Below are positions 2,589-30,712 of a DNA stretch of 57,388 bases, one piece after another. The stretch is from assembly GCA_001179505.1 (NCBI GenBank), contig CDMY01000527.1, positions 1 to 57,388 on the forward strand, read 5' to 3'. Origin of the DNA: Vitrella brassicaformis CCMP3155 (Eukaryota; Protista; Chromerida). The translations under genes and the position numbers were made by a program. The notes under the pieces were generated by a model that ran no database searches, was not told where the DNA came from, and was given only the letters and a program-made list of their open reading frames with translations. Numbering within the stretch: the stretch's first letter is position 1; every line of letters begins with the position of its first letter.

Positions 2589-2623
<35 letters not shown>

Positions 2624-3569: not shown

Positions 3570-4591
3570 ATGGACGAAATCCTCACGATTTGCTTCGTAT
3601 TTTTCGGGGCGCCGGCCCTCACAACCATATTGTACCCGTAAGAATGCACAGCGGATGTGGGGATGGATGAGATGCATCTGCACGTTGATGGTAAGTATGT
3701 CATGCCGTCCGTCCTTATTTGCATATGCATTCAGCATAAATCGCCAAGAGCAGTGGCCGGACTGCTATGAAGGCTATGAGGGCTATGAGGGTGAGCCACT
3801 GGAGGGTGAGACCATCATGCATTCACAAAAGAGGAGAGAGATCCTGTGGACAGCAACCATAGTGCGTGTGTATGTGTTGTGTGCTGCAGACGACGAGGGC
3901 GTAGAGAGCCGCTGCTGTAGAGGCATTGCGGGCATCTATTGCAAGGGGGAGGGCAAGAAAACCGACGACCCGCCCGCGAGTGTGCCGGTGACCTGTGAGG
4001 CGCCCGTGCTGCGCAACACCAAGGCTTCTCTTCTCAACTCGACTGTGACCGGCGAATGGGTGCCTGTGCCTGATGAGGGCGGGCTGCCTCCCAGCAGCGC
4101 CTTCAGCTACACGGTCGGGATGCAGGTCGCTTACGAGTGCGTCCAGGGCTACCGCAGTGACCACCCCATCACGGCGGTCTGCACCAAGGAGGGCATCTTC
4201 GAGTATGACGAGAAGGACGAGTGCGTCCCCATCTCGTGCCCTTCGTCCGACACGCACAACCAGCCGCACCGACGGCAGACGGGCCACTCCTACCATGTGG
4301 GCGACGTGGTAACCTTCTCGTGTGCCGAGGGCACCCTCAATGGCCCCAGCGACATCACATGTGAGCCGTCGGGAATGTGGTCGTCTGACCCAACGGACAT
4401 CACCTGCACAGCCATCTCATGCGATGCCATCGACCTCAACGCCACACGGGGGCGGCGCCAATCGCTGCAGCAGATAGCCCCGTTGAGCAGTGAGGGAGGC
4501 CTCTGGACACTGACGGCGGCGGCGTGGCGCGAGGCGCCTGTGAGCGACGAGGCGTCTGAGGAGGACAAAGCCGTGCAGATCATCATGAAGG
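3570..4591 (+). CDS. Secreted Sushi/CCP-domain protein whose 3' part is dynein-derived (runs into N gap)
   Basis: Exons 3570-3637 (MDEILTICFVFFGAPALTTILYP, signal-like), 3735-3805 and 3890 onward splice in frame via GT-AG. Two Sushi-like units (CEAP..YEC..AVC..DEC; CPSS..FSC..ITC..W..TC) and the start of a third. Confidence 0.7.
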
Positions 4592-4891: not shown

Positions 4892-5023
4892 CCACAACAC
4901 ACCACAACACACCACAACACACCACAACACAACACAACAGAACCACACACACACACACACACGACATGGATGGATGGATGGATGGATCTCTCTCCCTCTC
5001 TTTCTCTCTCTGCGTGTGTATAG

Positions 5024-9963: not shown

Positions 9964-11233
9964 TCCACCCCCACACACACATGGGTGGAGGGGGCGGGGG
10001 GGATCCGGAGTTCCGGAAATCAGGAGTCAGGAGTCAGGAATTGCATGTGTTTTATAACGTAGGGTCGTTCATGTCCCCTTAGCAACTGAGTAGCGTTTTC
10101 TTTTTCGATTTATTCATGTGATGTGTTGTGTGCTGGTGTCGTGATGGATGTGGTGGGTGTGTGGGTTTTCTTTGTCTTTTATGGGCGTCTGATTGTGCCG
10201 TTTATGAGTGCCCAGAGGGTGTTTGGTTGTCTTTGTCGATTTATTCTGTGCTGCTGCTGTTTTTTAAAGCCATATATAGACACACACACACACACACAGT
10301 GGCCGTCATGACGGGAGAGGTGGATGGATGGATGGACTGATGCAGTGCGGCTGTCAGTGGTGCGTGTGAGGGTGCAGGGGAAGGGGTCTGTTCTGACTAG
10401 AGAAGCCTATCGCACCTTTGTGTGTCTGTGTGTGTGTGTGTGTGTGAGTTATTGACTGTGTGTGTCTGACTGTGAGTCATTGGTGTGTCTGTGTGTGTGT
10501 CTGTGTGTCTTCGATGGGTGTGTGTCTTTATGTGTAGTTCTGATCTAGAGAAGCCCATCGCACGGTGTGTGTCGGTGTGTGGCTGCATCGCACGTCGCAT
10601 CGCTCGGCTGTTTGGCCGTATGTTTGTTATCGCTGGTCTGTCTGTCTGTCTGCCTGGCTGACTGTCGTGTTCGTTGTGTGTGTCTGGGGGGCCGGCCACT
10701 TCTTCTGCACCCATCCACCCGCACCACTGATGCGTCCGTACGGCTCTGCACACCACAGCCATTCCTCCCGTCCATCCATCTATTCCATCCATCCATTCAC
10801 CCTCGGCGACACTGTTGTATTGTGTGTGCTGGATGTGCGTGCTGATATCTTTATGCTGCCCCCCCCGCCCCGCCCCTACTTGAATGTATGTAGCCACCCA
10901 CAGGCATACGGTTTATCCAGAGGGAGGGCGCCGGGCTCGTTTCTGGTTTTCTTCCGGTTTATCCAGAGGCTGCGTTCCGGTTGACAATTACGTGTCGGTG
11001 TGTTGTTTTGGTGTGACAGTATGGTGACATGTACCCCACCCCTTGCACATGCACCCTCTGCGTGTGTGACCTTTCGGGATCAACCGAATGCACACCTAGG
11101 AATGGGTAAAATCTCCAGAGGGGGATGGCACCTCTAAGCTCGCAACAACGGCGAAGGAAGGGCAGAGGAGCGAGGAGACCTTGGTGAGGTCCCGAGGTAC
11201 ATGTAGCAGTCTGATTCATCGCCTCCTTCCCAG

Positions 11234-13203: not shown

Positions 13204-13894
13204 GACCATGAAGGTGAGGGCCACACAGGTGATGCAGACGACTAGGTGGTTTCAACGGAGGAGACACGACTAGCTGACTGTCTGGCGGGCGAGCGGACTG
13301 CGTGTGGTGGTGTATGCATTGTATCTGTTGGCGGCATGTCTGCACGACAATGAGAAAGACTCACCCGTAGAGAGAAAGGTCCATTTCCATCCTTTATCTC
13401 CCACATGGCAAGCAAGAACGACAAGAGAGAGTGCCGGATTGACACTGATTCATCAAGCGGCAGACAGAAAACGCATGTAAAGGAGTCAGTGACACACGGG
13501 ATATAAAATGGAGGCAGCGATAACCTGGCCCTTAAAACAATACAGCCACCTGAAGGAAGACACACACCCATCACCAAAACTGTCTGCCTATCTCCCACTA
13601 ACTATCGGGCTGACCGTTGGGTTTCTGACGAATTTGCCGAGAATCATGGACGGCCCGTCAAAGAGATGCAGGAGCGCCCCACATCGCTCCTTGTAGAGGT
13701 GCGGCAATGTTGCCAAGGGAAACGCCAAGACCGTCCGCCGCTATAGGCCATCAATAAACTATAACCACACACACAACACAACACAACGCATCACACCCAC
13801 GTCGCTGTCTCCGTGTTTCCCATACGTCTCACCTATGCATCTAAATAAGCGTGTTTCTGTGTCATGGTGGGATTGACCTTGGGGTGCTGCTCAC

Positions 13895-14170
13895 TGACCG
13901 GCGAGACGCCCTTCAGACGCCATTGCGACCCTTCTGGCTGCTGGCCCGCAGCTGAACAGACACATATAAAATGGTGGCCTGAAGGTCTCTGTGGTGTGGG
14001 CCTCGGCCTCCTTACGCGCCAGAGAGACATGCTGTGACGGCACGTCGACATGTTGACAATCAGTCGTGAAATATAAAATATAAGCAGCGATGTCTGAACA
14101 CATACAAACGGACAGATGAAGAGATGCGTGAGTGTGACGGGAGTGCTCTCCGCGTGTGTCTCCACTAACC
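13895..14170 (-). repeat. Intron plus RCLHFI exon module (long type)
   Basis: Donor GTTAGTGGAGACAC and acceptor TGTGTTCAG|ACATCGCTGCTTATATTTTATA. Matches 2788-2940, 18310-18462 and 25846-25998. Confidence 0.8.
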
Positions 14171-16297
14171 TACTGCCGGCCTCGCACCACTCAAACGGGA
14201 GACCTCTTGCGGCGCCGAAGGTGGTGGTGTGGCCTCAGACTCCTGCATCGAACACACCCAGGGAGTGATGCCGTCAACGTGTGATCACGGCCAATGTGGT
14301 CTTACCAGCAGGTACCAGCAGACACAGATGACTACGTAAAGCAGCGCTGAGAGGTGTTGCAGCACCTGCACTCACACACCACACACGACACACACACGTG
14401 CACAAGTTGCCTCCCTGCGTGTGTCTCTATCTTCTGCGTACCTCTGGCACAACCACAGATAATCGCCAACCAAATCGCGCCCCGGCCCCCTCCCTCAGGG
14501 AGAGGGCCCCCATTGATAGGAATGGAATGCACCAAAAATAGTCGGCCACGGCGAGTATATATGTGGTCTCACGGCATACACGCAGTCACCAGCCAGGGTC
14601 ATCTCCAGCACTCACACAACACATCCAGCCTCCAGCATGAAGTCATAAACCTTCCGCACTGAGCCACATCTACTCACTGCTCGTGTTGGTGAGATACGCG
14701 ACCTCAGGCTTGGCGCACCCACCATTTGTCCATCCATCCATCCATTCATCCAGCCATCCCATAGATATTTAAAAAACACCGTCTAACACACTGACGGACA
14801 TACTGACGGACAGACAGCCAGACAGACAGACAGACAGCCACCAGAGAGAGAGAGAGAGATAGATAAGTTGCGGTCTTGACAGCTCTTCCGGCGTGGGCCG
14901 TCGTTGACGGCGCCTTGTGGTAGTGTACTGCCTTGTAGGGTGGGCGTCTTAGGGCTCCTGGTGGGGCAGAAGGGCAGAAGAGGCGGGGGCGGTGGCACAG
15001 AGGGCGGATGGTGGACGAGCGAACGACTGCATTGCAGCCAACACACACAGACAGCAACACACCAGGAGAGACAAAGGTGACTTCATGTCGTGTGTGTGTT
15101 GTGTTTGTGTGGGATGGGCGTACCGATGAGGTGGTGGTGCGGTGCAGAGTGACCACAGACACACAACACAACGACGGACACACTACCCCTCACACAGACA
15201 CCACCCACCACTCACACAGACACGACAACCATGCGGCTTCTCTTCAGCCGCACCACGTGCAGCACCACCCGATTGATGGTTTCGGTCACCGACAACAGTG
15301 CCGACGCACATACATAAGTAGACAGACGGGGAGAGGACAGCGACACCCACACAAACGAAAACCATCACAAAAGAAAGATGAGAAAACAGCCAGACGGCAG
15401 CCAAACTAAGGGCGAGCCGTCCAGAGGACAGCAACGCCATAAAGGCGAGCCTCCCCGAAGGGAAGTCGACACCGATAAACCACCTCCACACAACAGACAG
15501 ACAGGGCAGACAATCGAATGCGATGAGTCCCCCACCCACCCACCCACCGCATCACTGACAGACACCCCTGATCTCTCTCACACGCCCCACTCTCGGCGTC
15601 GTGGCGGCTACTGTACGGTGTGTGTGTATGTGTGTCTGTATATGGCTTTTAAAAACAGCAGCAGCACGGCGACAAATGGACCAAAGAAAACAGACAAAAC
15701 ACACACCCTCGGGCACTCTCATAAATGGCATAAACGGACAGACGCCGACAAATCATAAAGATAAAGAAACCCCCACACACTCACACAGCACAATACATCA
15801 CAATACAGCACACAAACATCACTAAACTAAGCAAGCACAGATATCCTGATATCCCCCCCTCCTCTGAGGCCACTCAGAGGAAGCGCCGGAACAAAACGCA
15901 CAGCAGCGCGATGACTATCATGGTCCTCTCCGCCGCTGATGACCAGGTGGTCTTTCGTTCGCTGTTTTCCAACAAGTTGGCGTTGTCGTCGAAGGCAGCA
16001 AACAAGGCGGATTGGCGTTTTTGACGAGTCCACAGATATAAAATGAAGGCAGCGATATCTGAAGAGACATACAAAGACACGAGACACATGAAGAGAGACG
16101 TGGCATAGAAATGTGCGGCGTGAATCTGCCCACCGACACACCTGCCAGCAGTGCCGCCCAGTAATGGTGTCCTGCCAGCAGAACCGGGCGGCCCTCCTTC
16201 GTCTGAATGTGCAGCTATGCACACACACAGACAGAGCTGCACAAGTGCACAGCCTCTGCATATGTCTCCACTTACCGCTGCCGCCCAACACGTCGCC

Positions 16298-17674
16298 TTA
16301 TGCCAGCAGGTAGGCCATGAGGACCTGGTACGCCTGCATCTTGCGGGCGTGCTCTCGGGCGGGGAGTGGCATCCAATCATCCATGGCGGGCTGGGGCGGG
16401 GGCAGCAGCACCGGCACTACGGGAGGGGGCGGGAGGATCATGTAGTGCATGTGGTGGACTGGCTGCACTATGACATGCAGCATGGGGGCCGTAGGGTGGG
16501 CGTTGGCAGGCTGTGGCTGGGCAGCGGCGACGGCCGGGTGTACGGGGTGGGCTCGGATATAGAATGGCCCCTGTGGTGTTGTGCACGCCAAGGCAGGAGA
16601 CGCACACAGACAGGCAGACAGGCAGACAGGCAAATGGATTGATGCATGTGTGTTCGAGTGTGGCGGTGCTTAGTTCTCACCTGGGGAGCCTCCTGCTGCA
16701 CAGCCGCCGCCGCCACATAGCCTCCAGCCGCCTGGCCGTCCTGTGAGCAACAAGCCAGCAGCAACGGAAAGATGCTCAATTCACTTCAACAGATCGCTCT
16801 TTGCAGCTCTTTTTTTGCCCACCAGCTGCCGATGTCGCACCAGGAGGGCCGGTGACGACCTCGACCGCCGGAGGGCCACGGCATGACGGCCCCTGATACG
16901 GCGCCTTCTCCTGCCCCTCCTGGCACACAGCACCCTGAGCCGCACGCACCCGACAGACCCGATGGAATTGTTGTGGTCTCTGTCTGTCTATCGCCATGCG
17001 TGTACCTTACCAGATAAGGGTGATGGTGAGTGATGGGGACAGCATTATAATGTGGCTGTCCCGGTCCTCCGTGTACGATGCACTCAATCCGTCCACCTCC
17101 CGCCGGTACTCAACAGTCTCAGGGACCACAACAGTTGTCGCGTTCAGGAAGAGTAGGCGATCACGTCGCTCGGAAAGCGCTGGCTGCTCGGAGGGGCGGC
17201 CACAGTGCTGGTCGGTGGGCTGACAGTGGCATCTTGTGACACTCTGGATGAACAAAAGCAGCTGTGGCAGAGGTGTCGAGGACTCCACAGATATAAAATG
17301 GAGGCAGCGATGTCTGACACGCACAGAGACAAAGAGACACTCGCCTTGTGCCAGAGGCATCGTTACTTTGTACTAATGCACAGCCTCTCTGGATGTGTCT
17401 CCACTCACCGCTTCCGCCCAACACCCGGGGGCTTAGGTCGACAAGTAGCCGAAATGGCGAGGCAGGCCAGGCACAGCCAGCACCCCCTCTCCGCCCACAG
17501 CAGCTCGGCCTCCTCGCGGCGCCTCTTGGCCAGCTCCGCCGCCCGTCGGCTCTCCCTCTTCGGCAGCGGCACCCAGTCCACGATGGGCGGGTGGTAGATG
17601 ATGATGGGCGCTGGGACCAGTGCGGGTCGTGGTGCCGCTGCCGGGTAGAGGGGGATGGCGGGGAGATAGTTGAC
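16298..17674 (-). pseudogene. Chain of family modules P-D-O-R-Q-P
   Basis: P exon 17674-17409 splices in frame to the RCLHFI exon (17314), which runs into O (..EDRDSHIIMLSPSLTITLIW). R (~16960-16820, acceptor apparently mutated), Q and P (16570-16298) follow. Confidence 0.5.
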
Positions 17675-17896
17675 CTGTCGCAGACCAAACAGAGAGAGGG
17701 ATTCATGTGTGGTCTGCACTGGTAAGTCTGTTCGTGATGCTTGTTTCTCACCAGGGGCCGCCCGACCTGCACGCCCACCTCCCTCGTCAGGTCGGCATCC
17801 TGCAGCCAACAAACCAGCAGAGATTTCCTCTCAGTTCAGTGGATAGAATGACGTTTGTGTGGGGCCATCTGCTCACCGTTATGCCGGCCGCCCCGC
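17447..17896. repeat. ~450 bp segment duplicated at 24048-24497
   Basis: Near-identical P exon, intron and upstream mini-exon, offset about 6.6 kb. Confidence 0.85.
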
Positions 17897-18462
17897 CCCC
17901 CACTGTGTGGGTGCTTTAGGTGGCCAGGTAGGCCAGCAATGGGCCCACCGGTGGGATAATGCTCGTGCCGACATGATGGGCTGCGATGCGGCCAGACAGG
18001 CCAAGCGTTGGCGCTGCTGACGAGTCCGCAAATATAAAATGGAGGCAGCGATGTCTGAACAGATGGATATACGAAGACACAAAAGAGAGACATGGCGTAG
18101 AAATGTGCATCTGCCCACCTGCACACCTGGAAGAGTGGCGCCCAGTGACGATGACCTGCCAGGGCCCTCTTTCCTCTGAAAATGCAGCAGGATACACACA
18201 CACAGACAGCTTAGCATCGTTGTGCTGCACAAATCGTGTGTCCCCACGCTTTCGTACCACGCTTACATACAAAGTGGACACCTGACTGTCTCTGTGTGAG
18301 TTCGCCTCCTTACGCGCCAGAAAGACAATTTATGACGGTACGTCCACATGTTGATAATCAGTCGTCAAATATAAAATGCAAGCAGCGATACCTAAAGACA
18401 CAAACGGACAGATGAGATGCGTGTGCGGGATCGGACGGCTCTTTGCGTGTGTCTCCACTCAC

Positions 18463-20866
18463 TGCTTCCACTCAACACATGGTGGCTTTGTGTGGCCAGG
18501 TAGGCCGCCACCCCTCCTGCACCAGCTTCTTGTATTGTATTTTCTCATCTTGCGGGCGCGCTCGATGGCCGGGAGTGGCTTCCAGCCCATGGCGGGCTGG
18601 GGCGGGGGAGGGGGCGGGACGTAGTACATGGGGTGGACGTAGTAGATGGCTGCGCTAGCACAGAGATGGTGGCCGGGGCGGGCACGGCTGCGGGAGCGGG
18701 GGGCCGTGCAGCGGCCACTCGTGGATTGACGGGGTGGGCCGGCATGTAGATCGGCCCCTGTAGTACCAACACACCAAGGGAGGCGGATGGATTTATTCGG
18801 TGTGTTCTGTTTCGGTGGTCTGCATTGTGCACTGTGCACTGTTCGCTCACCGCCTGGTGCTGGTGTGTGCGGCGAGGGATGGCCGATGACAGCAGGGCGG
18901 GGGACGACTTGGCCCGTCGAAGGGCCAGCCGAGCCCCCGTCCCTCTGCATCGGTGTCGTGTAGGTCTCGGCTTTATTAAGGCATATACGAAAACCACCGC
19001 CCTGCAACCAAGAACACATAGATAGCCTCGATGGATGGATGGAATGGACGGTGTATGCAGTATGGTGACGACGAGGACCAGCACCAGTCCCGACAGCCGG
19101 CCCACCACCACCTCCCTCAGCTCACCGAGTGTCCTAGCACGTCTGGCCACACGATCGCCAGCCGTCTTGTCGCGGTCCTGGACAACCTCTATGTCCTCCG
19201 TGCCGTTCTGCAGCTCGTCGGCGAAGGTCCAGACGGCGCCGCTTGGTGGAGGAGCAATGGCCACGCGCACAGGGAGTGGGTGGCCTTGCAGGTAGGCCGA
19301 CAGGCGCTCAGACACAATGGGAAGGTCCATGTCGTCGGGCCGCAGACTGAGAGTGGTGTTGCCAGGCGTAATCTCGACACCGTATGTCGCTAGATAGCCG
19401 ACGACCGGTGCGCTTCTCTGCATCGCTGGGTGTGTGGTGGGTTTGGGCGAGATGGATGGGGGTGTGGGGCTGACGTAAGGGCCAGTCCCGGCAAGCCACT
19501 CGTGCACAGACATGTCTGCAGACAGACAGACAGACAGACAGGAGACATCCGGTTTGTCTGCATCGACTGGTGAATGAATGTGGTCACTCACTTGGTGCTC
19601 GCTGAGTGTGTCGACTTCGCCCTCCGTTGAGTTCATGCGGGCCTCGTATCTCTGCTTGAGGTCCTCCAGGCGCCCGGCGTGCAGTGCGGCCCTGACGTCG
19701 GGACTAACGGAAGACACCGACGGGTCAGACTCTGACACACATCCATCGACCCACACACACAGAGGTGAGATGAGCTCCATGTGTGTCTCTGTGTGTGTGT
19801 GTTGTAGGTGGTGGGTTGGCTGACCTGTGACAATCTCATGGCTGCCATGAGCCGCTTCTTGGCCTCCGCTGTGCACGGTGTGCTCACGGAAGGGGCTGGT
19901 GATGCGTCGGTCAACCACGTGTTGTGGTGCGGCAAAGGGCCTCTCGTAGAGGGTGGGGATCGTGAGACGGCTGCTACTCTCGACCGCCCCAGGCTCTTCC
20001 CCGACAGAGTCCGAGCTCTCCCCTCGCTTCGCCGCAAGGCGAGACGCCACGAGCTTCTTCTTGACGTTGCTGTTTGTCTTGCTGGCGAGTTTGTCCCAGT
20101 CCTCCCCCACGCTTGCTGCTCGGGCCGCCGCCATATGGCCCAGAGACACGCGGCGAGCCGACTGGCTAGCGCGTCCGTCGGCCTCCTTGCCGGACACAGC
20201 AGCAGCACCAGCAGACTTGTCAGCAGCGCCTTTGCCGGACGGCGGCAGCACGATGGACTCCCTGAGAATGGACGGCTGCTGCACAGACGGCTGTGCATGT
20301 ACTACACTTGCCGCCGCCGCTGCTGCCAGGCCCGCACGTGTACGCAGCTTGGTGACCTGCATGCACCGAGACACAGACAAACAGACAGACAGGCGGGAAC
20401 CGGGCACAGAGACAGAGAGGGGGATGCGTGTCCGTGTACTGGTATGTCTGTATTGAGTCCGGTCCGTTCAATATATCTCTCACCTCGTCGAGGATAGCAT
20501 CATACCACAACTCGCGCTCAGCGTCGTTTGTGCACTTGAAACATGCCTTCATCCCTTTGGCCGACTCGAACAGATCAACGAGGCTGCATCGATGAAGACA
20601 CACACACACACACACAAGTCACACATGGCCGGCCATGCACCTTGCCTGCCTCCTTACGCGTACATGTGAGAGTCACAGTCCTTGACGTCCTTTGCCGTAT
20701 AAAATTTGTCGACGTCTGTCTCCTCCTCGACAGCGGATATTCTTGTCAGCCACACCAAACGAGACACAGTCACTCATGTGTACACATGTGGTCCACCTTA
20801 CCTTGTATGGCCGCTTGGCTATCTTGGTGTCGGGCTCCAGACGAATGGTCTTGGGCCAGCACCAGC
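18463..20866 (-). CDS. PH-like domain protein spliced onto R and P modules, possibly degenerate
   Basis: LVDLFESAKGMKACFKCTNDAERELWYDAILDE resembles a PH C-terminal helix and parallels the 36.5 kb gene. It is followed by a low-complexity region, LRRAKSSPALL and the Pro-rich WKPLPAIERARKM exon, which has a frameshift near its end. Confidence 0.45.
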
Positions 20867-21705
20867 CTGCGTCAGTACACATACACAAACACAGACAGAT
20901 AGAAGCCCTTTACATACTCCCATCCTCTATCTCTCACTCACCCCTGCCCCCTCCATCCCCTTCCCATCCACGTTCGGTTGGACGTTGAAAGCAAGGCGCA
21001 CACTGGTTGGATGTCGTTGAAATACACGTTTATGAAAACATACATACATACATACATACTATGACGCGTTAGCCACTTGTGCTCACTGATTGACCAACTT
21101 ACCCATCGGATGGCAGTGCGATAGTTGGCTGTCACTGGTGTGTCAGGAAGAGGAGGATTCTGCACACAGACAGCAAAAAAGCGGCAGACAGGCAGTGCAA
21201 ACATCACCGACGGCGACAGCGTTGGTCATTTGATGAGCACGTTATTTTCTGCATGAGCGGACTGACCAAACACAGACAGATGCAGTTGGTTGTGTTGTGT
21301 GTTGTGTGTTGTGTGTTGTGTGTTGTTGTCTGTCTGTATACCTACATTGTGACGAGAGACATCTTGGCAGCATTGATATCGTATGCACCGTGATGCGCGG
21401 CAGCGCGTTGCCCGGCAAAGGACGACGAACACAAAATCCTGTCCACACGTGCGCACACGTGAATGTATGTATGGGCGATCGGTCGTTTTGCCTCTCTGTG
21501 GTCGCACTCACTGAAGAAATTCACTTGGATTGGCTGATACAGCTGCTGCAATGCTGTACACACACAGAGACCGGTTCATCGATGACAGCCAATCGTTCGT
21601 CATGAAAGACGCATGAAGTTACCCTTCACGCACCTTCCATCCCTTTCCACAAGGCGATTTAGCCGTCGCGCTCGACGATTCCGAGCATCGGGTCGTCGAG
21701 GCCAC

Positions 21706-21999
21706 CCCTTGTTCCAGCCAATAGTTGACGTCTCCATGATGCGCTCCATCCGCTTCTTCAACTCGTTCGGCGTATGCTGCTGCGTGGAGCGGTGGCGGTG
21801 TGTCACTGCCGTAAGTCCTCAGAGCGACGTCCTCATGAAAGACATCCATCAAGGTATAGGATATCCAAGTGTGACGGTACCAAGGTGGATAAGCTAGTGC
21901 CGTCTCCGGTAACGGAGTGATCTTCGCGGGAGTAGTCGAAAACTGGCTTTGGCTGCCGTATCATGAGCGGTTCTTGACCAGCTTCATCTCTAGCACCAG
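21706..21999 (-). pseudogene. Nonsense-interrupted copy of the C-terminal domain of the 36 kb PH gene
   Basis: LVLEMKLVKNRS*YGSQ..ITPLPETALAYPPWYRHTWISYTLMD..PPPLHAAAYAERVEEADGAHHGDVNYWLEQ aligns with 36020-36330. TGA at 21961-21963. Confidence 0.75.
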
Positions 22000-22790
22000 C
22001 TGGTGAAGGACGAATCCGTAATGGTTTTGGAGTGCAACTTTGTCTACTTACCTTCCTCGCTGGCGCTCGCGCGCTGAGGGACGAGCCTCCAAGACTTCGG
22101 CTCAGGTGAGAATGTGCCAGGAAGCCTGCAAAAGACACAACGCAAGAAGACATCCAGGCAGACAGACAGACAGACTGACAGAAAGACATACAGACAGATC
22201 GACGAGTGACGACTCAGTGGCGAGTTGGCGTTGTTTAAGTCTCCGCAGATATAAAATGGAGGCAGCGATGTCTGACACGCACAGAGCGACACAAGACACA
22301 TGGAGACATGTGTGTATCGGTTCACCTTGATCTGCTTGCTGCCCCTCGTGCGGTGGTGCTCATGCTGTTGGGGCAAATGGACCTTCTGTGATGGTGGCAG
22401 CTGCGGCGGGGCGCGGAGGACGACGAAAAGGGCGGATTGAGCGGAGCGGCCACCAGCCGATATGGGCCAGCTCATGCGAGGCCGGTCGTTGGTCCGCTGT
22501 TGGCGAATGGGCGAGAACGACCCCAACGCGAGTTGGCATCGTTGACGAGTCCGCAGATATAAAATGGAGGCAGCGATGTCTGAACAGATGTGTCCATACA
22601 CTTCGAGACACAGAAAGTGAGAGACGTGGCACACCTGGACGAGTGCCGCCAGTGATGATGTCCTGCCAGCAGAACCGCCACAATACACACACAGACAGCC
22701 TGGCATCATTGTGCCTCGCAAATCATGTGCCTCTCCGAATGTGTCTCCACTCACCGCTTCCGCCCAACACGTGGAAAGGTATGTGTGCGG

Positions 22791-23075
22791 TCGGCTGACG
22801 AGTTGACGTAGTTGACGAGTCCACAGATATAAAATGGAGGCAGCGATGTCTGAAGGCACATGGAGACACAAACGTGTGTCTCAGTCGGGAGATAGACATT
22901 CCCGCTTGCCTGCTGACGGCTCACCCCTTGTGGTCTCCCAGTCACAACTCAGACAGACACAGGCGGGCAGCCGCCCAACGTTTACGTTTTCAGGACGATT
23001 CATGCTGAACGCATAGGCAAACGGACGGACGGCATGACATACTTACCATCAACATGCAGATGCATCTCATCCACG
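22791..23075. repeat. ~285 bp segment duplicated at 28281-28563
   Basis: Near-identical RCLHFI exon, spacer and Sushi-family intron 1, offset about 5.49 kb. Confidence 0.88.
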
Positions 23076-23104
23076 CTGTTCAGTGGTCCGCTGTGTGTTC
23101 TTAC

Positions 23105-23650
23105 GTGAAGGTGATAGCCGCAATGGCCACTGCCCCGACGAAAACGAGCGAACAAACGAGTTCCATGACTGTTGCCTCAGGTCCCAATCCCGAATGGAGT
23201 CGATTTGAGATGGGCGACTGCGGTGGGATGCCCTCTCGGTCGCCCACATGCCGGTGGTCAGCAGCCGTTCCCTGGTGCACAACGACTTCCCCGTCTGCCG
23301 TCGGTGCGGGGGCTTGTTGGCGTCCGGGTTCGGGCATGAGATGTGGCCAGAGTCGAGCGGGTTGTCGGTCTTGCCCTCCGCCTTACAGTGTATCCCCGCG
23401 ATGCCTTGGCAGCAGCGGGCATTCCCTTCCCAGTCTGGAGCAGACACAAGACATACACACGCACTATGGTTGCCGTCCACAGGATCTCTCTCCTTTTTTG
23501 TGAATGCATCATGATCTCACCCTTGCAGACGGTTAGGACGTATTGAGGTTGATTTAGCCTGAATGCATATGCAAACAAGGACGGACGGCATGACATACTT
23601 ATCATCAACGTGCAGATGCATCTCATCCATCCCCACATCCGCTGTGCACT
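23105..23650 (-). pseudogene. Scrambled Sushi-family cassette: exon 2, Sushi fragment, then a signal exon
   Basis: LNQPQYVLTVCKG|..RCCQGIAGIHCKAEGKTDNP..ISCPNPDANKPPHRRQTG, followed by signal exon MELVCSLVFVGAVAIAAITFT (23166-23105). Introns are homologous to 3638-3889. Confidence 0.65.
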
Positions 23651-23696
23651 CTTACGTCTTGTCTCTTACATGATCCGACGCTTGACATCGCACACC

Positions 23697-23891
23697 CCTT
23701 GCCACAGCCTGAAACACACACGCCCGATGAGTAAATGATGTGGTGCTGTGTGCGTGTGTATGGGAGGGGTCAGGCGGGATCCTCACCCTATGAGGGCGAG
23801 GGTGGCGAGCAGCTGGAAGAGGCCGTGGTCCTTCGCGACGGCATCGTTACTCAACTAGAGCACATCCTGACTGTGATGATATCCGCGACTC
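23697..23891. repeat. Module T, repeated at 24745-24941 and partly at 27995-28110
   Basis: CTGAAACACACACGCCCG..GGGAGGGGTCAGGCGGGATCCTCACCCTATGA..GGTGGCGAGCAG is shared by all three. Confidence 0.85.
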
Positions 23892-24939
23892 GAGTATATA
23901 GGACTCCGCAGATATAAAATGAAGGCAGCGATGTCTGAACAGAGACAGAGGAAGGGGGCATTCGCCTTTCGCCAGCTTCTCTTGCTCTCTTGATCTGTAA
24001 GAAAGAGGCTCAGTGAGTGTGTGTGATACCCAGCTCTCCCAGGAAGCGGCCGAAATGGCGAGGCAGGACAGGCACAGCCAGCACCCCCTCTCCGCCCACA
24101 GCAGCTCGGCCTCCTCGCGGCGCCTCTTGGCCAGCTCCGCCGCCCGTCGGCTCTCCCTCTTCGGCAGCGGCACCCAGTCCACGATGGGCGGGTGGTAGAT
24201 GATGATGGGCGCTGGGGCCAGTGGGGGCCGTGGTGCCGCTGCCGGATAGAGGGGGATGTCGGGGAGGTAGTGCACCTGTCGCAGACCAAACAGAGAGAGG
24301 GATTAATGTGTGGTCTGCACTGGTAAGTCTGTTCGTGATGCTTGTTTCTCACCAGGGGCCGCCCGACCTGCACGCCCACCTCCCTCGTCAGGTCGGCATC
24401 CTGCAGCCAACAAACCAGCAGAGATTTCCTCTCAGTTCAGTTGATAGAATGGCGTTTGTGTGGGGCCATCTGCTCACTGTTATGCCGGCCGCCCCGCGTG
24501 TCATCTCTCCCCAACTAAACCGCCGCTCGTGGTCCTGTTGCGTGATGGATGGACACACAGGGCAGAGCATTACAGTCCTGTCGACAACGCATATCGTGCC
24601 CCAACACACGTGAGCCATCATCGCGGGCGCAGGGGCGGTGACATGTCGGCGGATGACGGCCGGGCGGCGGCGGCTACGTCGGTCGGCTCGGCGCGGTGGG
24701 GCTGGGCGGAAAAAGGCCATGATCCGACGGTACACACGGCACATCCCTTGCAGACTGAAACACACACGCCCGATGAGTAAATGATGTGGTGTGTGTGTGT
24801 GTGCGTGTGTATGGGAGGGGTCAGGCGGGATCCTCACCCTATGACGGCGAGGGTGGCGAGCAGCTGGAAGAGGCCGTGGTCCTTCCCGACGGCTTCGTTA
24901 CTCAGCTAGAGCACATCCTGACTGTCCTGATATCCGCGA

Positions 24940-25433
24940 CTCTTCCAGCCTCCTCCCGGCGGCGGCCGGCCTCCTCGCGGCGCCTCTTGGCCAGCTCCGC
25001 CGCCCGTCGGCTCTCCCTCTTCGGCAGCGGCCCCCAGTCGATGATGGGCGGGTGGTAGATGATGATGGGCGCTGGGGCCAGTGCGGGTCGTGGTGCCGCT
25101 GCCGGGTAGAGGGGGATGGCGAAGAGATAGTTGACCTGTCGCAGGGTGCACGCGTCACACGAGTACGTGACGACGTCGCCCACGCGGTAGGAGTTCCCCG
25201 TCTGCCGTCGGTGCGGGGGCTTGTTGATGTCGGGGATGGGGCACTCGATGCGGCAATATATTCCCGCAACGCCTTGGCAGCAGGGGGTCTCATCGCTCCC
25301 TTCCCCGTCTGCAGCACACACAACACATACACATGCGCTTTTGGTTGCCGTCCACGGGATCTCTCTCCTCTTTTGTGAATGCATCATGATCTCACCATCC
25401 CAGACGGTTAGGACGTATCGAGGTTGATTCATG
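24940..25433 (-). CDS. Chimeric ORF: Sushi-family exons fused in frame to the Pro-rich P exon
   Basis: MNQPRYVLTVWD|..ETPCCQGVAGIYCRIECPIPDINKPPHRRQTGNSYRVGDVVTYSCDACTLRQ-VNYLFAIPLYPAAAPRP..WGPLPKRESRR. Expression unknown. Confidence 0.5.
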
Positions 25434-25632
25434 CTGAATGCATACGCAAACAAGAACATCATCACGACATACCATCAACAGACACGGGCGGGCAGCCGCC
25501 CAACGTTTGCGTGTTGAGGACGATCATGCTGAATGCATACGCAAACAAGGACGGACGGCATGACATACTTACCATCAACATGCAGATGCATCTCATCCAC
25601 GCTGTTCAGTGGTCCGCTGTGTGTGTTCTTAC

Positions 25633-25694
25633 GTGATAATGACAGCCGCAAGGGCCAGGGCCCCGACGGAAACGAGGGAATGTTCGAGTTCCAT
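25633..25694 (-). other. Isolated Sushi-family signal-peptide exon
   Basis: MELEHSLVSVGALALAAVIIT followed by donor GTAAGAACACAC and the family intron 1. Confidence 0.65.
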
Positions 25695-25994
25695 GACCTT
25701 TTCCTGCTCTGCAGCCACTGAATGACGAACGATCCCTCGAAGCTTCCCATCCCGCTATCCACTCTGGCTGCCGGCACCTGCAGCTGAAGAGACACATACA
25801 TACAAAGTGGACACCTGACTGTCTCTGTGTGACTTCGCCTCCTTACGCGCCAGAAAGACAATTTGTGACGACACATCCACACGTCGATGATCAGTCGTCG
25901 TCGAATATAAAATGTAAGCAGCGATACCTAATCACACACACGGACAGATGAGATGCGTGTGCGGGATGGGACGGCTCTCTGGATGTGTCTCCAC

Positions 25995-27020
25995 TCACCC
26001 ACCCCCAATTGCCCACCCCTTCCACCCAAGACATGGGGGGCTTTGTGTAGCCAAGAAAACGATGTCCGCCCGCTGCAGCAGTGCCGTCATGGCATTCCAT
26101 GCCTCGCCCTCCGCCTGCTGCAGCATGCTGTCCAGCGTGTTGATGACCCTGCCCGCCGTCGCCTTATCACCCGGCTCCGCCCACTCAAGGAGACCCGGGG
26201 CAGGCCCGATGACATCCCAATGGAGCACATCCAGCACAATGAAGGGCTCCGCGGCCCTCTCCATGCACAGCAGCTTGGCCAGCAGCTGTTGTGTGTGGGG
26301 CGAACGGTTTTGGTAGTAAATGGCGGTACTGTCCGTGTCCACCACCGACGCAGCAGCTGCACTCGGGGCCATGAGGTCCCCGCCCCGTGCAGCGCCTTCA
26401 TTATGTCTGCAATAAATGCCGATTCCGAAGCGGCTTCAGCGCTCAACAGGGAGGTCCATTGCTGCAGGTCGAGGAGCATAGCGATGCCTTGGTCGAACAT
26501 GAGCGAGGATGAGCAATACTGCGGCATGTCAAATGTCAACAGTGGCCTCGCTGGACGTCGTCGAGGATGGCCATGTGCTTAATCTGACCATCACACACAC
26601 ACACACACACTCACAGATTCATACTGCATATTCACCAGGCCAATGCGTTGGGAAGGGTACCTGAGTGAGCTGAAGGTGGGAATGCGGTCCATGGGCAGCG
26701 ACTTGAGCTGCACAGAGAGCTGACACACACACACACACACAGAAAGAGAGAGAGAGAGAGAGATGGATGATCCCCGATGTGGCCTGACCCGACGCGACCA
26801 CAGGCAGAATAATGAGCACGTGATTGTCTGTGTATGCCTTCGCTTTCCACACACGCATACCAGTGCGTCCCTATTGCCGCTTATAGCCATGCCCTTGACG
26901 AGGTAGGTTCTGACGCCGCTCTCAATGCCCAGCGGCAGCACACGCGGGGGCTCCGTCTTGACGAGCTGCACCACCTCAGCCTCATTGATCACCTGACCCT
27001 CCGTCAGCACAAACACCTGC
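25995..27020 (-). CDS. Hypothetical multi-exon protein, probably frameshifted
   Basis: Coding-like segments MFVLTEGQVINEAEVV.., LKSLPMDRIPTFSSLRYPSQRIGLVNMQ, MPQYCSSSLMFDQGIAMLLDL.. and HTQQLLAKLLCMERAAEPFIVLD..LATQS. They are separated by microsatellite introns and end at the shared GTGAGTGGAGACAC donor. Confidence 0.4.
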
Positions 27021-28591
27021 CTGCAACGAGCACAAGGCGTAGATGCATCCCATCTCGCATCTCACGCATGGCTGCAGCAGTTATCCTAATGCATGGCGCA
27101 CATACCCCGCCGGGAGGATGCGGTAAAGGCAGCACAGGGCCGTCACCAATGGTATCATGGGTATCATCGGTGGTAGGGGGATGGATTGCAGATGCTGGTC
27201 TCGAGTAGACCGTCGTCACTTGTGAGCGAAAAAGCGAAAACAGCCAACAAAGAAGCGGGGTTTGCTATTTTTTCGTGTGTTTTGGCGAGAGCTGACCCGA
27301 CCGTCCCTCAGCACGAACACACGGCTGCAATCCACACACACACACACACACACACACGAGAGAGAGAGAGAGAGAGAGGAAGAGATGGATCTAGAGGTGT
27401 GCGTGGAAGGGGCACTCACCGTGCGTTTCCCTTAGCGGGCGTCATGCTCATGAAGGGGATCTCGGTGCCGCCCATGTCGTCATCGACCGTCGACACGAAT
27501 GCCAGCGCCTCGGCAACAGTGGCCTCGCTGGACTTGACCGAGGATGGCCATGTGCTTAATCTGACCATCACACACACACACACACACTCACAGATTCATA
27601 CTGCATATTCACCAGGCCAATGCGTTGGGAAGGGTACCTGAGTGAGCTGAAGTTGAAGAAGCGGTCCATGGCCATGGCCTTCATGCTCTGCGCCACACGC
27701 GGCGACCCACTCCAGTCCAGCACAGAGGGCAGCAAGTCTTTTATTCACTTCGCATGGTTGAAGTGCAGGTATGTCCTACACTTCGTCCACAACATTGTAG
27801 TGCTGTCGACAACACATATCGTGCCCCGACTCACGTGTGCTATCATGGCGGCCGCAGGCGCGGTGACGTGTCGCCTTATGACAGCGGGGCGGCGGCGGCT
27901 ACGTCGGTCGGCTCGGCGCCGGCTACGTCGGTCGGCTCGGCGGGGTGGGTGTGGGCAGATGGACGCCATGATCCGACGATGGACATGGCACAGCCCTCGC
28001 CACAGCCTGAAACACACACGCCCGCTTAGTAAATAAAGTGGTGCTGTGTGCGTGTGTATGGAAGGGGTCAGACGGGATCCTCACATTATGACGGCGAGGG
28101 TGGCGAGCAGAGCGAAGAGGCCAACGTCGCCCTCGTACTCATCATCCGCCACGTGGTGGTAGACTTCCTGCAGCCCATCGGCTGTCGTGGTGTTGGCCGT
28201 CTGGTTGACAATCGAGTTGACGTCAAAGAGGAAGTGCAGGTGGGGCTGGGCGTCCTCTGGTGGAAAGGCGGTGGCTGTGGTCGGCTGACGAGTTGACGTA
28301 GTTGACGAGTCCACAGATATAAAATGGAGGCAGCGATGTCTGAAGGCACATGGAGACACAAACGTGTGTCTCAGTCGGGAGATAGACATTCCCGCTTGCC
28401 TGCTGACGGCTCACCCCTTGTGGTCTCCCAGTCACAACTCAGACAGACACGGGCGGGCAGCCGCCCAACGTTTACGTGTTCAGGACGATTCGCTGAATGC
28501 ATAGGCAAACAAGGACGGACGGCATGACATACTTACCATCAACGTGCAGATGCATCTCATCCATCCCCACATCCGCTGTGCCTGTCCTTAC

Positions 28592-29057
28592 GTGAAGAGG
28601 GTGACTGCAGCAAGGGACAGTGCCCCGAAGAAAACGATCGAACGAGCGAGTTCGTCCATGCTGACTTTTTTTCCTGTGTGTGCTGGAGAAGCGTTCCACT
28701 TGCCCTTCCCCCTGCAGTAGATCCCGGCCACGCGTTGGCAGCAATGGGTCTCCACGCCTTCATCTTCTGCAGCACACACAACGGATACACACGCGCAATT
28801 GGTTGCCGTCCACTGGATCTCTCTCCTTTTTTGTGAATGCATCATGATCTCACCCTCGCAGACCGTCACTAAGTGTTGGGGTTGATTTAGCCTGAATGCA
28901 TAGGCAAACAGGACATCATCACGACATGCCATCAACGTGCAGAATTTGCAATTGCATCTCATCCATCCCCGACATTCGCTGTGCGTTCTTACCTGAACCA
29001 GACGATTGCGAGGGCCACTGCCCCGACGATAACGAGTGTTTGCGCGAGTTCGACCAT
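28592..29057 (-). CDS. Small Sushi-family-derived protein with signal exons at both ends
   Basis: Exons 29057-28993, 28891-28854 and 28766-28592 splice in frame: MVELAQTLVIVGAVALAIVWFR-LNQPQHLVTVCE-EDEGVETHCCQRVAGIYCRG..KVS-MDELARSIVFFGALSLAAVTLFT. Confidence 0.55.
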
Positions 29058-29489
29058 CCTTTCGTGTTTGCGTGTGTTCTGAAAAAGCGTTTCACCGGGA
29101 ACTTGAAGCTCGCGCCGTGACGGGTGCCGCATTGTTCCTATTGACGACTGCCCATCTCTAGCCAATAAGGCACGTCTCCGTGATGTGCTCCATCTCGAAA
29201 GCTCCGTCCACTCGCTTGGCATCGGTCCTGTGTCGCACAACTTGAACCTCGATGTCTGCATTGGCACACCTGCAGTGTGATCCTACATATGCATAGGGCA
29301 AGAGTCGAACGTTTCTTGCCTGCAGACAGGTCACATCATTCCGCTGATGGAAGCGTGATGCGATTCTTGTCCTTCAAGAAATGCCTTGTGTGTGCGCTGA
29401 AGATGGCTACCACACAAAGAGGCAATAAGTAGTCTGGAAAACAAGAAGAAAATGGAGGAAAATGCTCACTGTCTCCCGCCGTCTCGCGT

Positions 29490-30528
29490 CGAGAATTCTT
29501 ACCGGTCTGTCCTCGTGTGGGAGTGGGGTTGTGGCACAAGCTCGATGGTTGNNNNNNNNNNNNNNNNNNNNNNNNNNNNNNNNNNNNNNNNNNNNNNNNN
29601 NNNNNNNNNNNNNNNNNNNNNNNNNNNNNNNNNNNNNNNNNNNNNNNNNNNNNNNNNNNNNNNNNNNNNNNNNNNNNNNNNNNNNNNNNNNNNNNNNNNN
29701 NNNNNNNNNNNNNNNNNNNNNNNNNNNNNNNNNNNNNNNNNNNNNNNNNNNNNNNNNNNNNNNNNNNNNNNNNNNNNNNNNNNNNNNNNNNNNNNNNNNN
29801 NNNNNNNNNNNNNNNNNNNNNNNNNNNNNNNNNNNNNNNNNNNNNNNNNNNGCGGTCGAGAATTCTTACCGGTCCTGTCCTCGTGTGGGAGTGGGATTGT
29901 GGCACAAGCTCGATGGTTGCGATGACACACCCACACATTCAGATCAGATCATCCCTGTGCGCCTCTTTGCACCTGTTGCTGTCTTCTCATCCGTCCTCCT
30001 CGCGCTGGACAGAAATCCTTAAAAAAGTGCTGCTGTCTCTCTGGCTCATTTGTGACGGACCTGCGGCTGCCTACCCGCTGCGGTGCATGGCGGTGCCCGT
30101 CAACAGAAAGAGAAACTTCAAGATGGCCTGCAGAGAGGAAGAGAGAGAGTGCAAAAGCGCAGTCTATATGATCCGCCAGGCACACACACCTTCGGTCACA
30201 TCCTTCCGCTGATGGCAGCGGCCGTAGGTGGTGTCGTTGACCAGCTGCCCTGGGCGCTGAAAACGGCCACCACGCGCGAAGGGCGTTAGGAGCGCCATGC
30301 CGATGGCGCACCCGGCCTTGAGTGAATGCGGCGGACGAATGGGTCGACAGAGTGCCTGCCGGGCAGCGAGTCGGGCAGCTCTGCTGCCAAATGACAAATC
30401 GAAGGCAAACAGGAAAGCAGAGAAGAGGGAGCGTCGTTGAAGGAGAGAGAGCTCAGTTCATGACGAAGAAAAGAGAGCAGCGGACGCCGTCTCCCCTGTC
30501 TCGCGTCGAGAATTCTCGCCGGTTCTGT
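29490..30528 (+). repeat. Copy B (complete) of the upstream unit, bounded by CGAGAATTCT(T/C) direct repeats
   Basis: CGAGAATTCTTA at 29490 and 29857 (both sides of the N gap carry the same ~60 bp, so the gap looks spurious) and CGAGAATTCTCG at 30507. Confidence 0.85.
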
Positions 30529-30712
30529 AGTCCAGCTCGAAAGACATGGAGAAACCGTGTTTGGAATGTAATTCTTCACACTCTCTCAGCGAAGTCGACC
30601 CTAGGGTGCTGCTTGAAACCGCTCCTTCTCCCCCCTAGATTCAAAGCTCGCAATTTTCTGAGAGGCGCCGTTTGCGCGGATCTGCACCGCGCCGTGCGTC
30701 CAAGGTGGGACG

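What the first reader, a model, noticed from the sequence alone, without database searches (positions are those of the whole stretch)
13895..29100. Combinatorial exon-cassette locus: about ten modules reassembled in many orders on one strand
Nearly all of this 15 kb consists of reused minus-strand modules with their own splice sites: S signal exon (23166, 25694, 28659, 29057; also 3570 +), E2 (23550, 25433, 28891), Sushi, O, R, Q, P, D (RCLHFI), the GTGAGTGGAGACAC donor (14170, 16275, 17408, 18462, 22753, 25998), T (x3) and U (24550, 27800). Orders seen: S-E2-Sushi-S, E2-Sushi-S, E2-Sushi-P-T-U, PH-R-P-D, P-D-O-R-Q-P and unknown gene-D-S. Several novel joints are in frame. This could be a diversification reservoir for secreted/surface proteins, analogous to variant-antigen cassette archives, or a neutral rearrangement graveyard (inference).
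Basis: partly seen in the sequence, partly recalled or inferred. Interest (0 to 1): 0.8.

Follow-up and report, generated by a model that had tools for sequence, protein, structure and literature searches.

The report
Shuffled membrane-protein gene cluster in Vitrella
This stretch of the alga Vitrella brassicaformis holds species-only genes for small secreted and membrane proteins that were repeatedly duplicated, cut and re-joined, mostly at conserved introns; the mosaic is real and partly under selection, but nothing shows a programmed variation system.

Summary
The window is a whole scaffold (C527) of Vitrella brassicaformis CCMP3155, not human. The mosaic is real. The S, E2, T, P and D modules and the GTGAGTGGAGACAC sites lie at the stated coordinates, far above chance. 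But only 46% of the 15.2 kb is repeated within the window, not "nearly all".

The modules have several sources:
- 5' ends of an intact Sushi gene on the plus strand (3571-4591)
- an orphan family of transmembrane-plus-tail genes
- parts of a PH-domain gene and of an unknown gene

Two scaffolds carry rearranged copies of the cluster with the same odd joints; one of them starts with telomere repeats. So the joints are inherited, not assembly errors.

Chimeric exon chains stay open with canonical splice sites. Coding exons show dN/dS of 0.1-0.6, and exon lengths change in multiples of three. Yet introns are 3-17% diverged while adjacent exons reach dS of 0.6-1.8, and exon types are reassorted between copies.

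Best reading: a cluster, probably near a chromosome end, evolving by ectopic recombination and exon shuffling. It is neither a pure graveyard nor a shown antigen-like archive.

The D "RCLHFI" module is a nucleotide motif with about 1,100 copies genome-wide; its function is unknown. The scan noted a comparable modular Vitrella-only family elsewhere (s1-212074).

The parts
28993..29057 (-). S(a): start exon, ATG plus hydrophobic signal/anchor segment, phase 0->2
   Evidence: Open, followed by a GTAAGA donor; one of 4 minus-strand S copies (family D17).
28854..28891 (-). E2(a): 38-nt micro-exon, phase 2->1
   Evidence: Canonical AG/GT, open. Identical (0/38) to the E2 of C711 and C779, although the neighbouring CC exons differ by 30%.
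28592..28766 (-). CC(a) exon (Cys-Cys motif, 5' end of the Sushi-gene large exon) fused in frame to a second S exon, S(b), ATG 28659
   Evidence: 175 nt, phase 1->2, no stop. Aligned with the parent gene.
28085..28339 (-). D1 exon: D motif (28317-28337), variable ectodomain with N-glycosylation sites, transmembrane segment
   Evidence: 255 nt, phase 2->2, open, canonical sites. A 112-nt copy of its ectodomain part lies 0.9 kb from the telomere of C711.
27835..28006 (-). T exon: basic, Arg-rich juxtamembrane tail, with a 24-nt in-frame internal duplication
   Evidence: 172 nt, phase 2->0, open. dN/dS about 0.3-0.45 against three other copies.
25995..27700 (-). Unique segment: exons of an unknown gene (VWA-like motifs by eye only). 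Its last ORF is the N-terminus of annotated model P0004.
   Evidence: Three exons have 67-97% identical translated matches on scaffold C493. Pfam finds nothing. P0004 sequence.
25928..25998 (-). G linker: GTGAGTGGAGACAC plus ~70 nt ending in an acceptor, directly upstream of a D motif. Other copies are at 14169, 16275, 17408, 18462 and 22754.
   Evidence: The exact 14-mer is locus-specific: 4 of the 7 genome-wide copies are here, and the reversed control gives 10.
25905..25925 (-). D2 motif copy, followed by a GTAAGG donor, a short intron and the exon that carries the S(c) ATG
   Evidence: Read from the sequence. The same arrangement occurs at 14071-14091 (-) and 2810-2830 (+).
24902..25694 (-). 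Unit C: S(c) 25694-25633, E2(c) 25433-25396, and a fused exon 25308-24902 (CC motif, N-terminal half of a Sushi domain, P-type proline-rich tail, stop)
   Evidence: Complete ATG-to-TGA frame over three exons, 168 codons, canonical sites. Sushi match is partial only.
24030..24905 (-). Unit 24k: exons X (TM) 24905-24838, T 24754-24610, U 24534-24478, V 24400-24353, P 24275-24030
   Evidence: All five are open in one phase chain and closed in the other two. No start codon of its own. Homologous to annotated proteins P0001 and P0002 on C711.
23067..23932 (-). Unit 23k: D 23932-23912, X 23854-23787, truncated T' 23708-23670 joined to the S-intron, E2 23558-23521, CC/Sushi' 23434-23067 running out of frame through S (ATG 23166)
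   Evidence: Four exons are open with canonical sites. The same joints are present on C711 and C779 at 92-94% identity.
22249..22849 (-). Three further D copies (22827-22847, 22557-22577, 22249-22269) with a short D1 exon, a G linker and an O exon
   Evidence: The 22,034-22,308 unit has an 85% identical copy on C1057.
16301..20582 (-). Annotated model P0003 (CEM20397.1, 725 aa): PH-domain end, long unique exons, then O-D1-V-P-D1-R-R2-Q
   Evidence: 12 exact exon blocks with GT/AG ends. It contains the D motif twice as coding sequence.
13501..14091 (-). Two more D copies (14071-14091 of D2 type; 13501-13521) at and beyond the left edge of the finding
   Evidence: 13,455-13,893 is 93% identical to C711 20,060-20,498.
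3571..4591 (+). Intact multi-Sushi (CCP) gene: the parent type of the S-E2-CC fragments. It runs into an assembly gap at 4592.
   Evidence: Pfam Sushi E 6.3e-12, 46.1 bits against a 20.7 cut-off, two domains. Sequence, alignment.

Best explanation
The locus is a fast-rearranging cluster of Vitrella-only genes for small secreted or single-pass membrane proteins. It probably lies near a chromosome end.

Shown:
- Whole blocks of the region exist in at least three diverged copies, on scaffolds C527, C711 and C779.
- Within and between these copies, pieces of different genes have been duplicated, truncated and re-joined. The pieces are the 5' end of a Sushi/CCP gene, an orphan transmembrane-plus-tail gene family, and parts of a PH-domain gene and of an unknown gene.
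- Exon types are reassorted between copies.
- Chimeric reading frames are open.
- Exons are under purifying selection.

Inferred:
- The joints arose by ectopic (non-allelic) recombination and gene conversion.
- Highly similar introns serve as the homology tracts.
- Because many exons share intron phase 2, exons from different sources can be spliced in frame.
- The outcome is an evolutionary birth-and-death and exon-shuffling nursery: it yields new combinations of signal exon, variable ectodomain, membrane span and conserved cytoplasmic tail, alongside broken leftovers.

Not shown: any somatic or programmed switching.
For: Identity:
- The genome is 72,700,666 bp in 1,064 scaffolds, and the hit names say Vitrella brassicaformis CCMP3155.

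Sources of the modules:
- An intact Sushi gene lies at 3571-4591 (+).
- The tail family is P0001 and P0002 on C711.
- The annotated chimeric models are P0003 and P0004.

Orphan status:
- An exhaustive HMMER search of 1.84 billion representatives finds only P0002, P0003 and P0004.
- The DNA of the family is confined to C527, C711 and C779, plus small pieces on C1057, C193 and C493.

Paralogous blocks:
- C711 and C779 share 75-96% identical blocks and end at the same right flank (C527 29,127-29,339).
- C711 begins with (CCCTAAA)6.

Inherited joints:
- T'->S-intron and CC/Sushi'->S occur on C527 and C779, and the second also on C711, with 6-8% sequence difference.

Open chimeras:
- Unit A/B has 5 exons and 705 nt without a stop.
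- Unit C runs ATG to TGA in 168 codons.
- Units 24k and 23k are open in one phase chain only.

Selection:
- CC exon: dS 0.56-1.76, dN 0.18-0.34.
- T exon: dN/dS about 0.3-0.8. U exon: about 0.1.
- E2 lengths are 38, 38, 38, 38, 38, 44, 71 and one of 39. S and CC lengths differ by 3.

Introns versus exons:
- Mean divergence is 0.11-0.17 for introns and 0.29-0.49 for exons.

Reassortment:
- E2 of C527_29 equals that of C711_22 and C779_19 (0/38), while their CC exons differ by 30%.
- CC of C527_23 nearly equals that of C711_22 (2/65), while their E2 differ by 8/38.
Against: - I could reach no transcript data, so splicing and expression of every model are unproven (one search found nothing).
- The two annotated models are long Augustus chains. 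P0004 reads the S(c) exon in a non-signal frame.
- Several copies are clearly broken: the Sushi domain is cut in half, the V exon of one C711 copy has an in-frame TAG, one E2 is 39 nt, T' is truncated, and unit 24k has no start codon.
- Telomere repeats are shown only for the paralogous scaffold C711, not for C527.
- The assembly is short-read velvet with k=75. About 90 nt of the P exon is identical in four copies, so the flanks of P could be mis-paired.
- It is not settled why introns are so much better conserved than synonymous sites.
Confidence: 0.55

Rival explanations
1. Neutral rearrangement graveyard: the region is a dump of duplicated gene fragments, the open frames are chance, and the annotated models are artefacts.
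For: - Truncated Sushi domain.
- A truncated 5' copy of a DEAD-box helicase gene at 541-2787, broken inside an exon.
- An in-frame stop in one V exon and a 39-nt E2.
- Unit 24k has no start codon.
- Only 2 of 4 exon-internal fusions are in frame.
- G+C-rich DNA gives ~90-codon chance ORFs on both strands.
Against: - dN/dS is 0.1-0.6 with saturated dS in the CC exon of the 'fragment' copies themselves. The T and U exons behave likewise.
- Exon length changes are multiples of 3 in 7 of 8 E2 copies.
- Five-exon chains are open in only one of three phase chains.
Confidence: 0.2
2. A few long multi-unit genes, or polycistronic transcripts. Here the G linker (~75-90 nt) plus the D motif is a processing or alternative-splicing signal between successive units, so that combinations are made at the RNA level.
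For: - Six G-D linkers join the end of one unit to the next. If spliced, the frame continues (phase 2->2); if unspliced, a stop falls in the donor.
- Annotators' models P0003 and P0004 chain many units.
- D usually sits just after a 3' splice site. Genome-wide, it has same-strand donors upstream: 57 against 20 on the other strand.
Against: - There are no shared constant exons and no array of alternatives for one exon position, so it is neither protocadherin-like nor Dscam-like.
- Several units have their own ATG exon.
- There is no transcript evidence.
- An in-frame stop in an unspliced phase-2 GTGAGT donor is automatic and carries no information.
Confidence: 0.15
3. Programmed diversification reservoir, like variant-antigen archives: silent cassettes are copied into an expressed gene.
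For: - A paralogous cluster lies 18-28 kb from a telomere.
- Hypervariable extracellular exons lie between conserved flanks.
- Exon types are reassorted between copies.
Against: - No distinct expression site.
- The joints are identical in three diverged copies, so they are old.
- Purifying, not diversifying, selection acts on the exons that can be aligned.
- The organism is a free-living alga.
Confidence: 0.05
4. Assembly artefact: a short-read assembler jumped between paralogues and so created the mosaic.
For: - Velvet k=75 with scaffolding and gap filling.
- Four 300-N gaps in the scaffold, and 99.8-100% identical duplicates beside the gaps at 4083-6583.
- Scaffolds C711 and C779 end inside the family.
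- A ~90-nt stretch of P is identical in four copies.
Against: - 13,895-29,100 has no gap.
- Copies differ by 3-30%, not 0%.
- The unusual joints are each seen on two or three scaffolds, with their own substitutions.
Confidence: 0.05

Closest known systems
Subtelomeric multigene families of apicomplexans (Plasmodium rif/stevor/Pfmc-2TM type). Comparison from my own knowledge; not tested by sequence.
   Same: - Short signal exon, variable extracellular part, one membrane span and a conserved basic cytoplasmic tail.
- Several diverged copies of the cluster, at least one near a telomere.
- Signs of ectopic recombination between copies.
   Different: - No sequence similarity: the family is an orphan.
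- Many short exons instead of two.
- A free-living alga, with no host immune system to evade.
- No evidence of switching or exclusive expression.
- Aligned exons show purifying selection.
Classical exon shuffling of extracellular modules such as Sushi/CCP (Patthy's phase-compatibility rule). From my own knowledge.
   Same: - Modules bounded by introns.
- Compatible intron phases allow in-frame chimeras.
- A Sushi gene is one of the donors.
   Different: - The dominant phase is 2, not 1.
- The Sushi domain is cut in mid-domain.
- Half of the joints lie inside exons rather than in introns.
Gene families with conserved introns and divergent exons: cone-snail toxin genes, snake venom PLA2 genes, HLA class I intron homogenisation. 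From my own knowledge.
   Same: Introns are 3-17% diverged next to exons 29-49% diverged, with synonymous sites near saturation.
   Different: dN/dS is well below 1 here, so this is not accelerated adaptive change of the exons. Old exon lineages with homogenised or constrained introns fit better.
Relict spliced-leader sequences of dinoflagellates. For the D motif only; from my own knowledge.
   Same: - A 21-24-nt strand-specific sequence in many unrelated genes.
- Often lies just after an AG acceptor.
- Common in same-strand tandem arrays.
- Contains a short run of T's, as the dinoflagellate leader sequence does.
   Different: - The 5' edge is sharp and the 3' side decays, the reverse of what a relict leader should show.
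- I did not look systematically for a leader-RNA gene; none was evident among the copies examined.
- Trans-splicing is not mentioned in the genome paper.

Membership tests
Sushi/CCP domain proteins (Pfam PF00084) | A complete ~56-residue domain scoring above the Pfam gathering threshold | tested here: not met
   Minus-strand unit C scores 17.3 bits against a 20.7 cut-off and covers profile positions 1-30 only. By contrast, the plus-strand parent gene (3892-4590) meets it with 46.1 bits, E 6.3e-12 and two domains.
Variant-antigen cassette archive (VSG / var / MSG type) | One or a few expression sites fed by silent, promoterless donor cassettes | tested here: not met
   Four S start exons and 12 D copies are spread along the locus. 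There is no unit that all the others resemble as donors.
Variant-antigen cassette archive (VSG / var / MSG type) | Subtelomeric location | tested here: inconclusive
   The paralogous scaffold C711 starts with (CCCTAAA)6 and carries its cluster at 18-28 kb. C527 itself shows no telomere repeat.
Variant-antigen cassette archive (VSG / var / MSG type) | Observed switching, or differences between clonal lines | not testable with these tools
   Only one assembly of one strain is available.
Exon shuffling by intronic recombination | Joints fall in introns, and the shuffled exons have matching phases | tested here: met
   - Exon phases: S 0->2, D1 2->2, T' 2->2, X 0->2, E2 2->1, U and V 0->0.
- The joints S-intron->pre-D and T'->S-intron are intronic.
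- Two other joints (CC->S and Sushi->P') lie inside exons, so the criterion is met only in part.
Clustered protocadherin / UGT1-type locus | Many variable first exons spliced to one shared set of constant exons | tested here: not met
   The tail exons T-U-V-P or R-R2-Q are repeated behind individual units. There is no single constant block.
Dscam-type mutually exclusive exon arrays | Tandem variants of the same exon within one gene | tested here: not met
   Modules occur in different orders, with their own start exons and stops.
Processed or decayed pseudogene cluster | dN/dS near 1, with frameshifts and stops spread over the copies | tested here: not met
   dN/dS is 0.10-0.57 for the CC exon, about 0.3-0.8 for T and about 0.1 for U. 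Indels come in threes. A minority of copies are broken.

The most novel reading that the evidence does not exclude
The 21-nt D motif marks RNA-processing boundaries. It has about 1,100 strand-specific copies, is Vitrella-specific, usually sits just after a 3' splice site, and is about 50-fold enriched in this locus, where ~80-nt G linkers join unit to unit. On this reading, the boundaries would be operon-like or leader-related processing sites in a chromerid. This locus would then be a tandem array of small surface-protein units near a chromosome end, expressed from long precursors. That would be a free-living forerunner of the variant surface-gene families of apicomplexan parasites.
Probability: 0.1. 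Interest if true: 0.8.

Novelty: new member of a known kind. Interest (0 to 1): 0.5.

Why it matters
Vitrella is among the closest free-living relatives of apicomplexan parasites. A telomere-associated, recombining cluster of orphan genes for small membrane proteins would show that the raw genomic machinery behind parasite surface-gene families exists in a non-parasite. That machinery comprises a variable outer part, a conserved tail, ectopic exchange between copies and in-frame chimeras.

The locus is also a clean natural example of exon shuffling in progress. Parent gene, fragments and chimeras lie side by side.

Two side observations are concrete and testable with the public RNA-seq of this strain:
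- introns are far better conserved than the synonymous sites next to them;
- a ~1,100-copy 21-nt motif sits at exon starts.

Tried and rejected
Searches that found nothing:
- Rfam at gathering thresholds and a tRNA scan.
- Pfam on P0001-P0003 and on eight minus-strand ORFs gave nothing above threshold. I therefore call the 26-27.7 kb gene 'VWA-like' by eye only.
- A look-up of contigs encoding P0001, which I hoped would give transcript assemblies.
- The 90% clusters of P0001-P0004 have one member each, so no transcript-derived members exist there.

D as a conserved peptide (RCLHFI): I first took the Leu-codon variation as a sign of protein-level selection, then rejected this.
- The motif has 1,094 genome-wide copies, including variants that put TGA in that frame.
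- The synonymous positions of its other codons are invariant.
- Downstream ORF length is the same in all three frames.

D as a relict spliced leader or a transposon end: not supported by its edge pattern. Not excluded either.

D as a general promoter element: there is no copy in the ordinary genes at 30-57 kb of the window.

Flanking ORF length as a test of whether D lies at the 5' or 3' end of genes: uninformative.

A metagenome scan for the motif gave 3 hits, which is chance level.

Procedure notes:
I replaced it with coordinate-based alignment.
- Spliced models were examined exon by exon, by reference.


Full report
**Identity and context**

The window is the whole scaffold C527 (57,388 bp) of a genome of 72,700,666 bp in 1,064 scaffolds. 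Protein hits are named Vitrella brassicaformis CCMP3155. The size and scaffold number equal those of the published assembly. It is a chromerid alga, not human. The sequence is eukaryotic and intron-rich, with 46-65% G+C, four 300-N scaffold gaps (none inside 13,895-29,100), and no tRNA or Rfam match.

**Observation check**

Self-comparison gives about 100 internal matches.

- The six GTGAGTGGAGACAC sites are also in place: 8 matches against 1.06 expected.
- The D core occurs 13 times against 0 expected.
- Only 46.4% of the 15.2 kb is repeated within the window, and 59.8% when the two paralogous scaffolds are added. Unique blocks of up to 3.6 kb remain. "Nearly all" is therefore overstated.

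**Where the modules come from**

- *Sushi gene.* An intact multi-Sushi gene lies on the plus strand from 3571. It has an S exon, an E2 exon and a large exon with two Pfam Sushi domains (46 bits). The minus-strand S-E2-"Sushi" units are 5' pieces of this gene type. The Sushi part is cut in mid-domain or deleted.
- *Tail family.* X-T-U-V-P is an orphan family of transmembrane-plus-tail genes. Annotated members are P0001 and P0002 on scaffold C711.
- *P0003* (CEM20397.1) is an annotated 725-residue chain from a PH-domain end through O-D1-V-P-D1-R-R2-Q.
- *P0004* (CEM20399.1) chains an unknown gene's last ORF, unit C, unit 24k and unit 23k, and reads the S(c) exon in a non-signal frame.
- *Unknown gene.* The 26-27.7 kb segment has a paralogue on C493 and no Pfam match.
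- *Helicase fragment.* Outside the finding, 541-2787 is a truncated 5' copy of the DEAD-box helicase gene at 29,998 onward. It is broken inside an exon and joined to a D2 unit.

**Reading frames**

I checked frames exon by exon, by coordinates, and built no joined sequence for any search.

- Unit A/B (S, E2, CC+S(b), D1, T) is open over 705 nt with canonical sites.
- Unit C (S, E2, CC-half Sushi-P') is a complete 168-codon frame from ATG to TGA.
- Unit 24k (X, T, U, V, P) is open in one phase chain and closed in the other two, but has no start codon.
- Unit 23k (X, T', E2, CC/Sushi') is open over four exons.
- Of the four fusions inside exons, two are in frame. The intron-mediated joints I checked are in frame because S, D1, T', X and E2 share phase 2 at their junctions. 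An excess of in-frame joints cannot be claimed.

**Selection and the intron puzzle**

- Across eight S-E2-CC units, mean pairwise divergence is 0.49 (S), 0.39 (E2) and 0.29 (CC), but only 0.17 and 0.11 for the two introns.
- In the CC exon, dS is 0.56-1.76 and dN is 0.18-0.34.
- In the tail units, T has dN/dS of about 0.3-0.8. U has about 0.1, with dS about 0.7 next to introns 4-7% diverged. V and P are as conserved as the introns, and about 90 nt of P is identical in four copies.
- Exon length differences are multiples of three, with one exception.
- The aligned exons are therefore old and constrained, while the introns are either homogenised or themselves constrained. I cannot say which.

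**Paralogous scaffolds**

- C711 (28,274 bp) and C779 (20,617 bp) share 75-96% identical blocks with C527. They carry a shorter or rearranged version of the cluster and end at the same right flank.
- C711 starts with telomere repeats.
- The family's DNA is otherwise almost absent from the genome.
- No relative exists among 1.84 billion protein representatives.
- The odd joints recur on these scaffolds with their own substitutions, so they are real and inherited.
- Exon types are reassorted: identical E2 sits beside 30% different CC, and the reverse also occurs.

**The D module**

- Its 21-nt core has 1,094 copies genome-wide with at most one mismatch, in equal numbers on both strands, and none in the reversed control.
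- It is at chance level in 241 million metagenome records.
- Dispersed copies share only 24-40 nt. They have a sharp 5' edge and a decaying 3' side.
- 57% have YAG within 14 nt upstream, against 29% in controls.
- Same-strand donor sites are enriched upstream (57 against 20). There is also a local peak at +60 to +150.
- No reading frame is preferred downstream. Upstream, the "RCLHFI" frame is the longest open frame in 26 of 52 copies.
- The G 14-mer, in contrast, is locus-specific.
- D is thus a nucleotide signal at exon starts or gene boundaries. Its function is unknown, and it is about 50-fold enriched here.

**Conclusion**

The best reading is a cluster, probably near a chromosome end, that evolves by ectopic recombination, gene conversion and exon shuffling. 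It produces both constrained chimeric genes and debris (confidence 0.55).

The rivals are:
- a neutral graveyard (0.2);
- long multi-unit or polycistronic transcripts that use the G-D linkers (0.15);
- a programmed cassette archive (0.05);
- an assembly artefact (0.05).

The main gaps are transcript evidence, which I could not reach, and the short-read velvet k=75 assembly.

Noticed in passing
window 13501-28337 (12 copies, minus strand), 2810-2830 (+); genome-wide: The 21-nt motif ATCGCTGNYTNCATTTTATAT has 1,094 copies in the 72.7-Mb genome and none in the reversed control. It is at chance level in metagenomes. It has a sharp 5' edge, usually lies just after a 3' splice site, and often occurs in same-strand clusters. 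Its function is unknown.
   Followed up: partly
C711 (L001) 4-45: Scaffold C711 begins with six CCCTAAA telomere repeats. A 112-nt copy of the unit-B ectodomain exon lies only 0.9 kb from them, in inverted orientation.
   Followed up: partly
window 541-2787 (+) versus 29998-32254 (+): A 94% identical truncated 5' copy of a DEAD-box helicase gene. The break at 2787 is inside the exon that encodes the start of the helicase C-terminal domain, and it is joined to a D2 unit.
   Followed up: partly
window 4083-4591 / 5754-6262 and 4892-5146 / 6329-6583: 99.8-100% identical duplicates on either side of 300-N gaps inside the plus-strand Sushi gene. They look like scaffolding or gap-filling artefacts, so the 3' part of that gene is unreliable.
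   Followed up: no
window 22700-29100 and C711/C779 copies: Introns of the family are 3-17% diverged, while synonymous sites of the adjacent exons are near saturation (dS 0.6-1.8). The divergence starts and stops at the exon borders.
   Followed up: partly
window 9089-10871 (+): An inverted partial copy of the 17.07-15.6 kb segment (end of D1, the R exon, and downstream sequence) lies on the plus strand. It is 86% identical to C779 13355-11587. The family therefore extends beyond the finding's coordinates.
   Followed up: no
window 26537-26697 and 27514-27674: A 161-nt direct repeat (94% identical) lies inside the unknown gene, next to AC and CT microsatellites. Two exon-like pieces of similar sequence suggest an internal partial duplication.
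   Followed up: no
window 38080-40272 versus 45695-47895; 11237-13226 versus 56534-54596: Further large duplications on the same scaffold: one direct at 92% identity and one inverted at 82%. The whole scaffold is a patchwork of segmental duplications.
   Followed up: no
window 24353-24400 and 17749-17799; C711 26799-26849: The ~48-nt V exon (phase 0-0) behaves like an optional cassette. It carries an in-frame TAG in one C711 copy, and the annotated model P0001 skips it.
   Followed up: partly
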